A stretch of DNA of 64,000 nt. Source: Saccostrea cucullata (lineage: Eukaryota). Location: positions 62,001-126,000 of the forward strand of contig NW_026927928.1 of the NCBI RefSeq assembly GCF_032062105.1, in the 5' to 3' direction. Every line of letters begins with the position of its first letter. Position 1 is the stretch's first letter. The notes beneath the pieces were generated by a model. That model was given only the letters and a program-made list of their open reading frames with translations. It had not been told where the DNA came from and made no database searches. A program made the position numbers and the translations under genes. This document shows, piece after piece, positions 13,966 through 29,267 of this stretch.

Positions 13966-14560
13966 TATATAAAGAAAAACGAAATTATTATATATATAAG
14001 ATGTTTTTGAAACGAAATTATTATTCTAATAAATTATGGAAAAACGAAATTATTAAAAAACAAAAATTAAAAAAATATATAAAGCAACCTGAAATCAATT
14101 AGTTACTGTACTTTCTTTTTAATTCCAGGTAAATTTCTTACCTGCTGAAAAAAAACGAAATTAAACAAATATATAAAGAAAAACGAAATTATTGCAAACC
14201 AAAAATATATAAAGAAAAACGAAATTAATATATAAAGAGAAACGAAATTATTAAATAAAGAAAAACGAAATTAATATATAAAGAGAAACGAAATTATTAA
14301 ATAAAGAAAAACGAAATTAATATATAAAGAGAAACGAAATTATTAAATAAAGAAAAACGAAATTAATATATAAAGAGAAACGAAATTATTAAATAAAGGA
14401 AAACGAAATTAATATATCAAGAAAAACGAAATTAATATATAAAGGAAAACGAAATTAATATACAAAGAGAAACGAAATTAATATATAAAGAGAAACGAAA
14501 TTAAAATATATAAAGAAAACGAAATTATTAAAAGTAGAAAAACTGAAACAAAAATACGGA
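13966..14560 (+). repeat. Left array of ~19-22-bp units (TATATAAAGAGAAACGAAATTA / TTAAATAAAGAAAAACGAAATTA)
   Basis: Directly visible tandem array. Confidence 0.9.
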
Positions 14561-15644
14561 ATTTATAGAGGTGCACGGTAAGGGTCTGAACCCATAAATC
14601 ATTAGTGCACCGCGTCTGATAGACCTGATTTTGTTTCGACAATAAACAAGTGTGATGTTTGCCTTTATATTCACCTTTTCCTTAATCGAAAACGTATCCA
14701 TTACAATACATGGATTGGACGAATTTAACCTTTGATATCTAATTGCACAACTATTTAAGAAAACATGAACGTTAAGATTCCGTTGTTTACAACTCGTATT
14801 GTTGAATTTTTAACATTCAGGAAATTCCCTTATCCATTATTCAACTATCGCACAATACATTCATTAAAAAAAGGTGTAAAATAATACGTTATCGATCGGA
14901 CTTGGGTTTGTTTGACATATTAAAAAATTGTTTAAAGAGAACAGGTGCAAAAAGTAAAACGAGTCAAAGTGGTTACAAGAAGTAGATTTTAATAATTGCT
15001 TACTAAATTAGAAATAAAGCAAATCAGTTGAGTCCTTGATCTTATCAACGCATAATTAGAGGTGATGTACTGGCTACTAGTACTTGTTCTCACATATTAT
15101 AAATGTCCAACCCTCAGTCTGTACTATTTACAAGTCAGTGGTACTATAATTCTTGTTCTCATATATTTTAATTGACAAACTCGCAATTTGTATATTTATA
15201 AGTCGGTGATATTTATAAACAAACAATGCACACTATTGTACATAAGAAATCCCACAAAGTAATCAAATCATTTTTCTTTTTATAGTTTCAACAATCTAAG
15301 ATTTATGGGTACACAGATCGGACGCTAGGTTAAGTTCATGGGAATCCAGTAATACTATACGCAAGGTCTTGACCTTCTAGCTGAGCTCTATTGGGCTTCC
15401 ACAAAGCCCAATAGTGCAAACCAGAAATAAATAAAGAAAAAACGAAATTATTAAATAAAAGAAAACGAAATTATTAAATAAAAAAAATTATTAAATAAAG
15501 AAAAACGAAATCATTAAGTTAAGATACCATCATTGATAAGTTTAACAAAACAAAACGCGGGGATAAGGGTGCCAGTCACGCGTGGTTCATTCCACAGTGA
15601 GTGTGTCTTCAGCGCCAAACAGGGACGTGTTATTCACAGAGAAA

Positions 15645-15782
15645 ATGTCAGTTTTAAAAAGGTAAGTATTTTACAAGTGTGTGTGCCTTGTTTGATGATA
15701 ACGACAACTAACATAGATGTATATAATGCAATTTAAAATGTGTATACTTGCAGTCAGTACATCAATTCCATCCTTACTTTAA

Positions 15783-15825
<43 letters not shown>

Positions 15826-27208: not shown

Positions 27209-27347
27209 TAGAGAAAGAGAGAGGGGGAGAGCCCGAAAGAGAGAATCTGTATATATACATACCCAAGGACTTGTCAATTTTCTTCCCACACTTTGAGCAA
27301 TAATTATCATTCTGATTAGGTGATCCACAAGAAGAACAAAATGCCAT
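21329..27347 (-). CDS. Zinc-ribbon + HECT E3 ubiquitin ligase (G2E3-like HECT), 10 exons, one apparent homopolymer frameshift
   Basis: Exons 27347-27263, 27105-26963, 25076-24770, 24473-24293, 24186-24088, 23668-23355, 22698-22517, 22312-22140, 21997-21783 and 21588-21329. Motifs CSSC...CSKC, EEALDQGGPRREF, LIFATGSDSIPPQGF, PIANTCANELKLP (catalytic Cys ~21429), C-terminal SFGRF*. The frame needs one extra A in the run at 24378-24384. Confidence 0.85.
26187..26273. repeat. Imperfect palindrome in a HECT-gene intron
   Basis: GCAGCTATTGCAGAAAAAA...TAACCCGC-TTAC-GCGGGTTA...TTTTTTCTGCAACAGCTGC. Confidence 0.6.
27165..27245 (+). repeat. (GA)n microsatellite in HECT-gene intron 1
   Basis: Visible; it generates the spurious SLSLSL ORFs. 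Confidence 0.9.
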
Positions 27348-27729
27348 TTTAGCGACGTCCTTATGAAATGAGGGGAATGGTGAAGTAAAAATATCCACGA
27401 AGTAATCAAATCATCCTCGTTATTGTTTCAACAACCCGTGATTTATGAATATACAGATGGGGCGCTAGGCTTATCCCGGAGGGAATTTTATAATACGATA
27501 CGCAAGGTCTTGACCTTTCAGCGATTCAAGCGCTCTTTGAATTGGATGTCATTAATTTTAATCAAGCAGAAACAGCCACCCTCTTGATCCTCTATGCATA
27601 ATGCCACACATCAACAAATTAAGTATACCGTTAAACAATTATTGACAATTTACTTCAAACATTAGATTGAAGTATTTGTTTCAGTTGATATTTTCTCTTT
27701 CTCCCTCACTCTCCTTTTTATTAAATAAT

Positions 27730-28280
27730 TTCTTTTTTTCTTTTTTTATAATTCCGTTTTTCTTTTTTTTAATAATTTCGTTTTTCTTTTAATAATTTAT
27801 ATAATTTCGTTTTTCTTTATATATAATTTCGTTTCTCTTTATATATTAATAATTTCGTTTTCTTTATATATTAATTTCGTTTTCCTTTATTTAATAATTT
27901 CGTTTCTCTTTATATATTAATTTCGTTTCTCTTTATATATTAATTTCGTTTCTCTTTGTATATTAATTTCGTTTTCCTTTATTTAATAATTTCGTTTCTC
28001 TTTATATATTAATTTCGTTTTCCTTTATTTAATAATTTCGTTTCTCTTTATATATTAATTTCGTTTTCCTTTATTTAATAATTTCGTTTCTCTTTATATA
28101 TTAATTTCGTTTTTCTTTATTTAATAATTTCGTTTCTCTTTATATATTAATTTCGTTTTTCTTTATATATAATTTCGTTTCTCTTTATATATTAATTTCG
28201 TTTTCTTATATATAAGACTTTAAAACTCGTTTTTCATATATATTAATTTCTTTTTAAGGCGGTATTTAATAATTTCGATA
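27730..28280 (-). repeat. Right array, reverse complement of the left array
   Basis: TAATTTCGTTTCTCTTTATATAT and TAATAATTTCGTTTT units. Confidence 0.9.
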
Positions 28281-29267
28281 TCACAGATATAGCTGCACAT
28301 TTGTTTGAATAGTGGAAAATGTGCACTTGCTGGTGTGTGACCTTTAGATTTCTATTTTAGGATTATACATCTACATATATAATTTTACCAACTATTTTTA
28401 AAATCTAATCATACCTAGAAGGGAATAGAATTTTTGAAAGACTTTCAAATTTCCCATTATATATATTTGTTTTTCATCAATAATTTCGTTTACAATTATA
28501 TAAAAATTTGTGTTCTTTATATATTTTTGGTTTGCAATTACAATACCTTTCACTAAAATCGAAAGAATAATGAATTTCAATGAAGTCTAGCTGTATATAT
28601 ACCAGGATTTAATCAAAACACGCTAAAATTGTATAAAGAATATAATTTTTCGTTAGAATTTGATAAAGAAATTAATATATTTTGGTAACCATAGTACAAT
28701 CTCTCATTAATACCAAAACCCACATGTATTTTATAGGGTTGAGTATCTTGTTCCAGTAGAGCTTTTGTATACATTTTAATTGAAATAAATACCAAATCAT
28801 AGAGCAGATTTTTATATTTTCTAAAAGCCATAACAATATGCTGATTAACAAAATATAAAAAATAATCATAAAAATAAGATTCTCTTGTGGCCTTAGCACA
28901 TGTATTGCTAACTGATTATGTCCAATAGATATATAGAAAATGTTCAACTGTTACATGTAACGTGTGCTATAGCAAACGTTAACGGTTGAACATTTTCAGT
29001 TTCATTTCAACAACCACTGAAACAATTTCATCGAATTTTGTCATAAAGCATCTATTAGAAAAGGGGAACAATATTTATAAATTTTATGGTCCCTGCCTTT
29101 CTTGGGTGTGAGGGGTGGGGAAAAACTAATGCAGTCATTTAAGCCCTCTTCACTCCTGTTCACAAAAACACTTTAAATGATGCCATGATTGTGATAAACA
29201 TTGAGATTTTCTACCAAAAATGTGAAATTAATAAACACAAAGTATTGGAGTAACGTTAGGGTTCTAG

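What the first reader, a model, noticed from the sequence alone, without database searches (positions are those of the whole stretch)
13966..28540. DNA transposon pairing an IS3-type transposase with a spliced HECT E3 ligase that keeps its catalytic residues
Seen: inverted AT-rich arrays enclose an intact DD(33)E transposase (+) and a tail-to-tail 10-exon gene (-). That gene encodes a zinc ribbon, a compact domain, an acidic linker and a HECT domain with the catalytic Cys (ANTC) and the -4 Phe. Established: eukaryotic IS3-related elements (IS3EU) are a poorly characterised two-protein superfamily, and host G2E3 has PHD fingers, which are missing here. Inference: the ligase is transposon cargo or a partner protein that might degrade silencing factors, modify chromatin or control transposase turnover. 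Many annotated G2E3-like genes could be such passengers.
Basis: partly seen in the sequence, partly recalled or inferred. Interest (0 to 1): 0.85.

Follow-up and report, generated by a model that had tools for sequence, protein, structure and literature searches.

The report
Transposon carrying its own ubiquitin ligase
This oyster jumping gene belongs to a poorly studied family (IS3EU) whose second protein turns out to be a HECT ubiquitin ligase, a pairing also kept in fish and a brachiopod, so many genes annotated as 'G2E3-like' are probably transposon parts rather than host genes.

Summary
Confirmed and general. The window (Saccostrea cucullata) holds an intact DD(33)E IS3EU/GingerRoot-type transposase tail-to-tail with a spliced HECT gene. 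RNA supports 8 of 9 introns; the catalytic Cys and -4 Phe are present. In this assembly 31 of 86 contigs with such a transposase have a HECT hit tail-to-tail within about 7.5 kb (one divergent). These pairs account for 30 of 69 HECT-bearing contigs. The pair recurs in four fish genera, Lingula and three unnamed assemblies, mostly inside TAYGG..CCRTA ends, with 6-bp target duplications in 6 of 9 elements. Both NCBI 'G2E3(-like)' fish genes I could trace back lie next to such a transposase. The 'compact domain' has a ubiquitin-like fold; relatives add CUE or UBX. Corrections: this copy lacks true termini and a TSD, and intron 1 is unsupported. Unexpected: many of these transposases begin with a signal-peptide-like segment. 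Ligase activity and substrate are untested; my best guess is ubiquitin/p97-linked turnover of the transposase. No paper searched names this protein as a HECT; Repbase could not be read. The scan's notes for this genome had no earlier report of it.

The parts
13966..14189 (.). Decayed copies of the 23-bp array; abuts a macro-domain exon that is cut here relative to its tandem paralog at 5233-5854
14193..14548 (+). Left subterminal array (14 x 23 bp), starting TGCAAACC; outermost terminal bases missing
15252..15376 (+). Direct repeat of 27395-27517 (76%); many ~1.8-kb non-autonomous copies join left and right parts here
15388..15524 (+). Internal end-like sequence: 11-nt inverted arms with a 5-nt spacer, then TGCAAACC and a short array; present in other genomic copies too
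18836..20050 (+). Transposase CDS, 404 aa: signal-peptide-like N-terminus, HTH region, DD(33)E core
27263..27347 (-). HECT gene exon 1, C4 zinc ribbon; its splicing to exon 2 is not shown
26963..27105 (-). Exon 2, basic helix (5' edge uncertain; RNA contigs extend to at least 27150)
24770..25076 (-). Exon 3, ubiquitin-like (beta-grasp) domain
24088..24473 (-). Exons 4 (24293-24473) and 5 (24088-24186), acidic linker
21783..23668 (-). Exons 6-9 (23355-23668, 22517-22698, 22140-22312, 21783-21997), HECT N-lobe
21329..21588 (-). Exon 10, HECT C-lobe with catalytic Cys (21428-21430) and -4 Phe
27717..28257 (-). Right subterminal array, inverted relative to the left
28450..28536 (-). Decayed right-end piece ending GGTTTGCA; no TSD beyond it

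Best explanation
An IS3EU/GingerRoot DNA transposon whose second gene is a HECT E3 ubiquitin ligase (zinc ribbon, ubiquitin-like domain, acidic linker, HECT; about 652 aa). Shown: the two genes move together as one unit, the HECT gene is transcribed and spliced, and it is under purifying selection about as strong as the transposase's. Inferred from the family: the DDE enzyme binds the subterminal arrays, cuts at TAYGG ends and inserts with a 6-bp duplication. Inferred from conserved residues: the ligase is active. Inferred, about 40% likely: its job is ubiquitin/p97-linked turnover of the transposase, limiting its level or stripping it from DNA after strand transfer, as ClpX does for phage Mu transposase (own knowledge). 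The UBL, CUE and UBX modules point to that machinery. This particular copy has lost its tips and is probably immobile, though both genes are intact. The confidence given is for the element's identity and a selected role of the ligase, not for the substrate.
For: 31 of 86 transposase contigs have a tail-to-tail HECT hit, one divergent, none tandem (hand comparison). Pair found for 6 of 7 foreign transposases traced and 2 of 2 'G2E3(-like)' genes traced back. TAYGG..CCRTA ends with perfect 6-bp TSD in 6 of 9 elements and a 7-bp TSD in one. Between two oyster lineages synonymous sites are saturated (pS 0.8) while dN is about 0.30 for both HECT exon 10 and transposase; a fish pair gives dN/dS about 0.18. 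Catalytic Cys kept in 97 of 99 complete fish relatives (81 by pattern, 16 more by eye). Beta-grasp fold, pLDDT 91, all top matches ubiquitin-like; CUE and UBX in relatives.
Against: No activity or substrate data. 55 of 86 transposase contigs show no HECT hit, including a set of near-intact 36-39% relatives (L010-L017); some are fragments or near contig ends and the scan is a lower bound, but the ligase may be dispensable in some lineages. A beetle homologue has none within 10 kb. Deep co-phylogeny is unresolved (Mantel rho 0.33, p=0.09). Some pairs may be haplotype duplicates in this 1.17-Gb assembly.
Confidence: 0.85

Rival explanations
1. The ligase is an anti-silencing factor: it ubiquitylates host repressors or chromatin proteins so the element stays expressed and accessible.
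For: Fungal IS3EU elements carry TET/JBP dioxygenases proposed to escape methylation silencing, plus an alpha-kinase opposite the transposase (PMC12730594), so the same slot holds host-modifying enzymes. The N-terminal modules vary between lineages (zinc ribbon+UBL, CUE, UBX), as an arms race would predict.
Against: No chromatin-reader domain (PHD, chromo) is detected by Pfam in any relative listed.
Confidence: 0.3
2. The transposase is routed to the ER by its N-terminal signal-like peptide, and the ligase with its ERAD-like modules controls how much is recovered or destroyed.
For: 54 of 75 homologues with a full N-terminus have a strongly hydrophobic segment there (29 non-redundant); 19 of those 29 meet the (-3,-1) cleavage rule by a crude scan. 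UBL, CUE and UBX are typical of ERAD factors (own knowledge).
Against: Fish transposases lack the segment as annotated yet keep the HECT gene. No trained signal-peptide predictor was available. The ligase shows no membrane anchor.
Confidence: 0.12
3. The HECT gene is a host gene (G2E3 relative) lying by chance between repeats, or a captured fragment with no role in transposition.
For: This copy lacks termini and TSD; GingerRoot elements are known to capture gene fragments (PMC6839031).
Against: Fixed tail-to-tail linkage in 31 contigs and in several phyla, inside TSD-bounded elements, with purifying selection.
Confidence: 0.02

Closest known systems
IS3EU/GingerRoot superfamily (Repbase; PMC10045372; PMC6839031)
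   Same: Integrase-like DDE transposase without HHCC, TA..TA termini and 6-bp TSD in relatives, two proteins (as cited from Kojima 2019 in PMC8232023).
   Different: None of the papers read identifies the second protein; here it is a HECT ligase. The signal-like transposase N-terminus is not mentioned in the two family papers. Repbase entries and Kojima 2019 could not be read.
Fungal TET+ IS3EU elements (PMC12730594)
   Same: A modifying enzyme encoded opposite to the transposase; TAYGG..CCRTA ends.
   Different: Alpha-kinase and TET/JBP instead of a HECT ligase.
G2E3 and the GL-Metazoa HECT family (PMC3673628)
   Same: Divergent HECT domain; databases name these proteins G2E3 or G2E3-like.
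   Different: Human and mouse G2E3 have three RING/PHD-like fingers and a HECT reported as non-functional; these proteins have zinc ribbon+UBL (or UBX) and keep the catalytic Cys. Whether GL-Metazoa is this family was not tested.
Ginger1 and Zisupton elements with ubiquitin-system domains (OTU, Ulp1, F-box; own knowledge)
   Same: DNA transposons carrying ubiquitin or SUMO pathway modules.
   Different: Those are proteases or adaptors, mostly fused to the transposase; here a separate gene encodes a complete catalytic E3.

Membership tests
IS3EU/GingerRoot | Integrase-like DDE transposase without N-terminal HHCC | tested here: met
   Pfam rva_4 and weak HTH_21, DD(33)E
IS3EU/GingerRoot | TA..TA termini, in this window copy | tested here: not met
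   Both ends stop at TGCA; copy appears end-truncated. Two guessed terminal patterns found nothing
IS3EU/GingerRoot | 6-bp TSD, in this window copy | tested here: not met
   Only an off-register 5-nt AT-rich match
IS3EU/GingerRoot | TA..TA termini and 6-bp TSD in HECT-carrying relatives | tested here: met
   TAYGG..CCRTA in 9 elements; 6 perfect 6-bp TSDs, one 7-bp, two without
IS3EU/GingerRoot | Two encoded proteins | tested here: met
IS3EU/GingerRoot | Phylogenetic placement with curated Repbase IS3EU transposases | not testable with these tools
   Repbase sequences not available
HECT E3 ligase | HECT domain with C-lobe catalytic Cys and -4 Phe | tested here: met
   relative P0158 matches Rsp5, E6AP and NEDD4L structures at E about 1e-4
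HECT E3 ligase | Ubiquitin thioester formation | not testable with these tools
   bench assay needed
G2E3 (host gene) | N-terminal RING/PHD-like fingers | tested here: not met
   No PHD-type Pfam family in exons scanned or in 120 relatives
G2E3 (host gene) | Single-copy gene at a fixed locus | tested here: not met
   Many dispersed copies

The most novel reading that the evidence does not exclude
Animal IS3EU elements are a two-component system in which a self-encoded, active E3 ligase governs the fate of a transposase that is partly sent into the secretory pathway by a cleavable signal peptide; and the HECT domain of host G2E3 is a domesticated relic of this transposon ligase.
Probability: 0.15. 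Interest if true: 0.93.

Novelty: new variant of a known kind. Interest (0 to 1): 0.78.

Why it matters
It names the uncharacterised second protein of animal IS3EU elements and makes its role testable, for instance in zebrafish or cichlids, which hold near-identical copies. A transposon with its own complete catalytic E3 ligase was not found in the papers searched. It also warns that 'G2E3 expansions' read as host adaptation (for example 20 copies in a hadal sea cucumber, PMC9700323) may be transposon copies: about four in ten HECT-bearing contigs detected in this oyster are such pairs.

Tried and rejected
Two guessed terminal patterns gave no match, which is uninformative. The spliced model was searched exon by exon, by reference; no search with the joined protein was run. 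A joined translation was built only inside scripts to check the reading frame. Three context look-ups had no record. A single-sequence fold of a relative's N-terminal half failed (pLDDT 32). Co-phylogeny was inconclusive. Ten paper searches found no description of a HECT gene in IS3EU; Kojima 2019 is not held. No PHD-bearing G2E3 came up in the lists, so its relation to this family was not tested. Rejected: chance neighbourhood; 13966 and 28540 as true ends.

Full report
Observation. The window comes from the oyster Saccostrea cucullata (the transposase is NCBI LOC134275889). Two arrays of a 23-bp unit face each other, with arms 14205-14517 and 27858-28170 95% complementary. The plus-strand ORF (Met 18836, 404 aa) matches Pfam rva_4 at E=4e-31 and has D, D and E with 33 residues between the last two. 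The minus-strand gene ends in a HECT C-lobe with the ANTC cysteine and a Phe four residues from the end. Public RNA contigs from two studies and raw reads from a third show eight joints that match GT-AG introns and keep one frame open from exon 2 to the stop. The first intron is not supported: its donor lay outside the stretch laid, and two contigs run on to 27150, past both candidate acceptors. The best model uses donor 27262 and acceptor 27106. Without splicing the zinc-ribbon start is out of frame, unless the CT microsatellite differs in length in expressed copies. I searched the gene exon by exon, by reference, and left out any search with the joined protein; it was assembled only inside scripts to check the frame.

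Boundaries. The young arrays begin at 14193 and fade near 28257; the outer pieces are only 70-79% like other copies. Other copies carry further bases outside the TGCAAACC motif, which survive here only at an internal end-like site at 15404. No 6-bp duplication flanks the copy, and the macro-domain exon cut at 13965 does not resume on the right. This copy is therefore probably end-truncated. Dozens of non-autonomous copies share both ends, many joined at a 125-bp direct repeat. Letters of other copies could not be fetched, so the oyster terminus and TSD stay undetermined.

Linkage in the genome. All but one of the eight closest transposase relatives (62-65% identity) have the HECT last exon 0.5-1 kb downstream on the opposite strand. 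Comparing by hand, 31 of 86 contigs with a transposase hit have a HECT hit tail-to-tail within about 7.5 kb; one pair is divergent and none is tandem. Chance would give well under one such pair (rough estimate from 86 windows of 8 kb in 1.17 Gb). Thirty of the 69 contigs with a Pfam HECT hit are such pairs. Some may be haplotype duplicates, and both lists are lower bounds.

Linkage elsewhere. The same arrangement appears in Oreochromis, Lingula, two Xiphophorus assemblies and three unnamed ENA assemblies; a beetle homologue shows none within 10 kb. Nine elements have TAYGG..CCRTA ends; six have perfect 6-bp TSDs and one a 7-bp TSD. These are the features given for IS3EU/GingerRoot (PMC10045372; PMC12730594; occasional 7-bp TSDs in PMC6839031). 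In the reverse test, genes named G2E3-like in Gambusia and G2E3 in Austrofundulus each lie tail-to-tail with an rva_4 transposase; the Gambusia transposase is only about 32% identical to the oyster one. Consecutive accessions show the same pairing in Notolabrus, and near-identical zebrafish proteins sit on three chromosomes. Most of the 120 best fish relatives are named G2E3 or G2E3-like, none lists a PHD family, 77 of 82 long ones have the ubiquitin-like domain, and 97 of 99 complete ones keep the catalytic Cys.

Selection and domains. Between the two oyster lineages synonymous sites are saturated, while dN is about 0.30 for both HECT exon 10 and the transposase; a fish pair gives dN/dS near 0.18. 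Exon 3 folds with pLDDT 91 into a beta-grasp; Foldseek and VIA-align return ubiquitin-like domains throughout (best Z 7.9, no single standout, so the fold class is shown but not a specific family). Relatives add a CUE domain or use a UBX domain. Shallow pairs agree between the two gene trees, deep branches are unresolved.

Mechanism. Shown: co-mobility, transcription and splicing of the HECT gene, purifying selection. Inferred from family knowledge: DDE transposition with 6-bp duplication, arrays as transposase binding sites, ligase activity. For the substrate I favour the transposase itself (about 40%): UBL, CUE and UBX modules tie ligases to ubiquitin chains and p97, which pulls proteins off DNA, and stable post-transfer complexes need removal, as ClpX does for Mu (own knowledge). 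Anti-silencing is the main rival (about 30%), supported by the TET/JBP and alpha-kinase genes of fungal IS3EU. A third reading comes from an unexpected feature: the transposase starts with a signal-peptide-like segment, shared by 54 of 75 homologues with a full N-terminus, 19 of 29 non-redundant ones meeting the (-3,-1) rule in a crude scan. Fish homologues lack it as annotated, and no trained predictor was run.

Comparison and novelty. IS3EU is described as poorly characterised and encoding two proteins (PMC8232023; PMC11934779). Searches pairing IS3EU, GingerRoot, HECT, G2E3 and transposon terms found no paper naming the second protein as a HECT ligase. Repbase entries could not be read and may note it. 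A HECT survey lists a divergent GL-Metazoa family beside G2E3 with no mention of transposons (PMC3673628). I file this as a new variant of a known kind: the lineage meets the IS3EU tests through its relatives, while this copy fails the terminus and TSD tests because it is damaged. Interest 0.78.

Noticed in passing
window 18836-18910 and homologues P0005-P0120: Transposase N-terminus resembles a cleavable signal peptide, followed in many relatives by a conserved V-L-P-x-Y start; odd for a nuclear enzyme.
   Followed up: partly
window 15388-15524: Internal end-like site with 11-nt inverted arms and a 5-nt spacer; the left arm is not a full right end, and the site is propagated in other copies.
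   Followed up: partly
window 27165-27231: CT/GA microsatellite inside candidate intron 1; one more unit would put the zinc ribbon in frame without splicing.
   Followed up: partly
window 2000-13960, 33800-36550, 56400-63550: Cluster of macro-domain genes, at least one with a RING and weak Deltex C-terminal match (11081-11710); the element interrupts one tandem copy.
   Followed up: partly
window 15778-16700, 18100-18650, 26180-26320, 26844-26886: Other repeats nested inside the element (166-bp tandem family, a 15-bp-unit foldback element, short high-copy pieces).
   Followed up: no
L010-L017: Near-intact transposases 36-39% identical to the window's with no HECT hit nearby; they may carry another second gene beyond the 1.5-kb flanks held.
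   Followed up: partly
P0224 (Hoplias): Relative with a weak N-terminal THAP match and Ser in place of the catalytic Cys; possibly domesticated or a fused gene model.
   Followed up: no
L033 2780-14922: Compact 5.25-kb intronless element with perfect TSD, next to a second rva_4 transposase with other ORFs; a convenient construct for assays.
   Followed up: partly
L035 and L036 ends: Intact TACGG..CCGTA ends but flanks do not match as a TSD; in L035 the right flank hexamer recurs 4 nt left of the left end.
   Followed up: no
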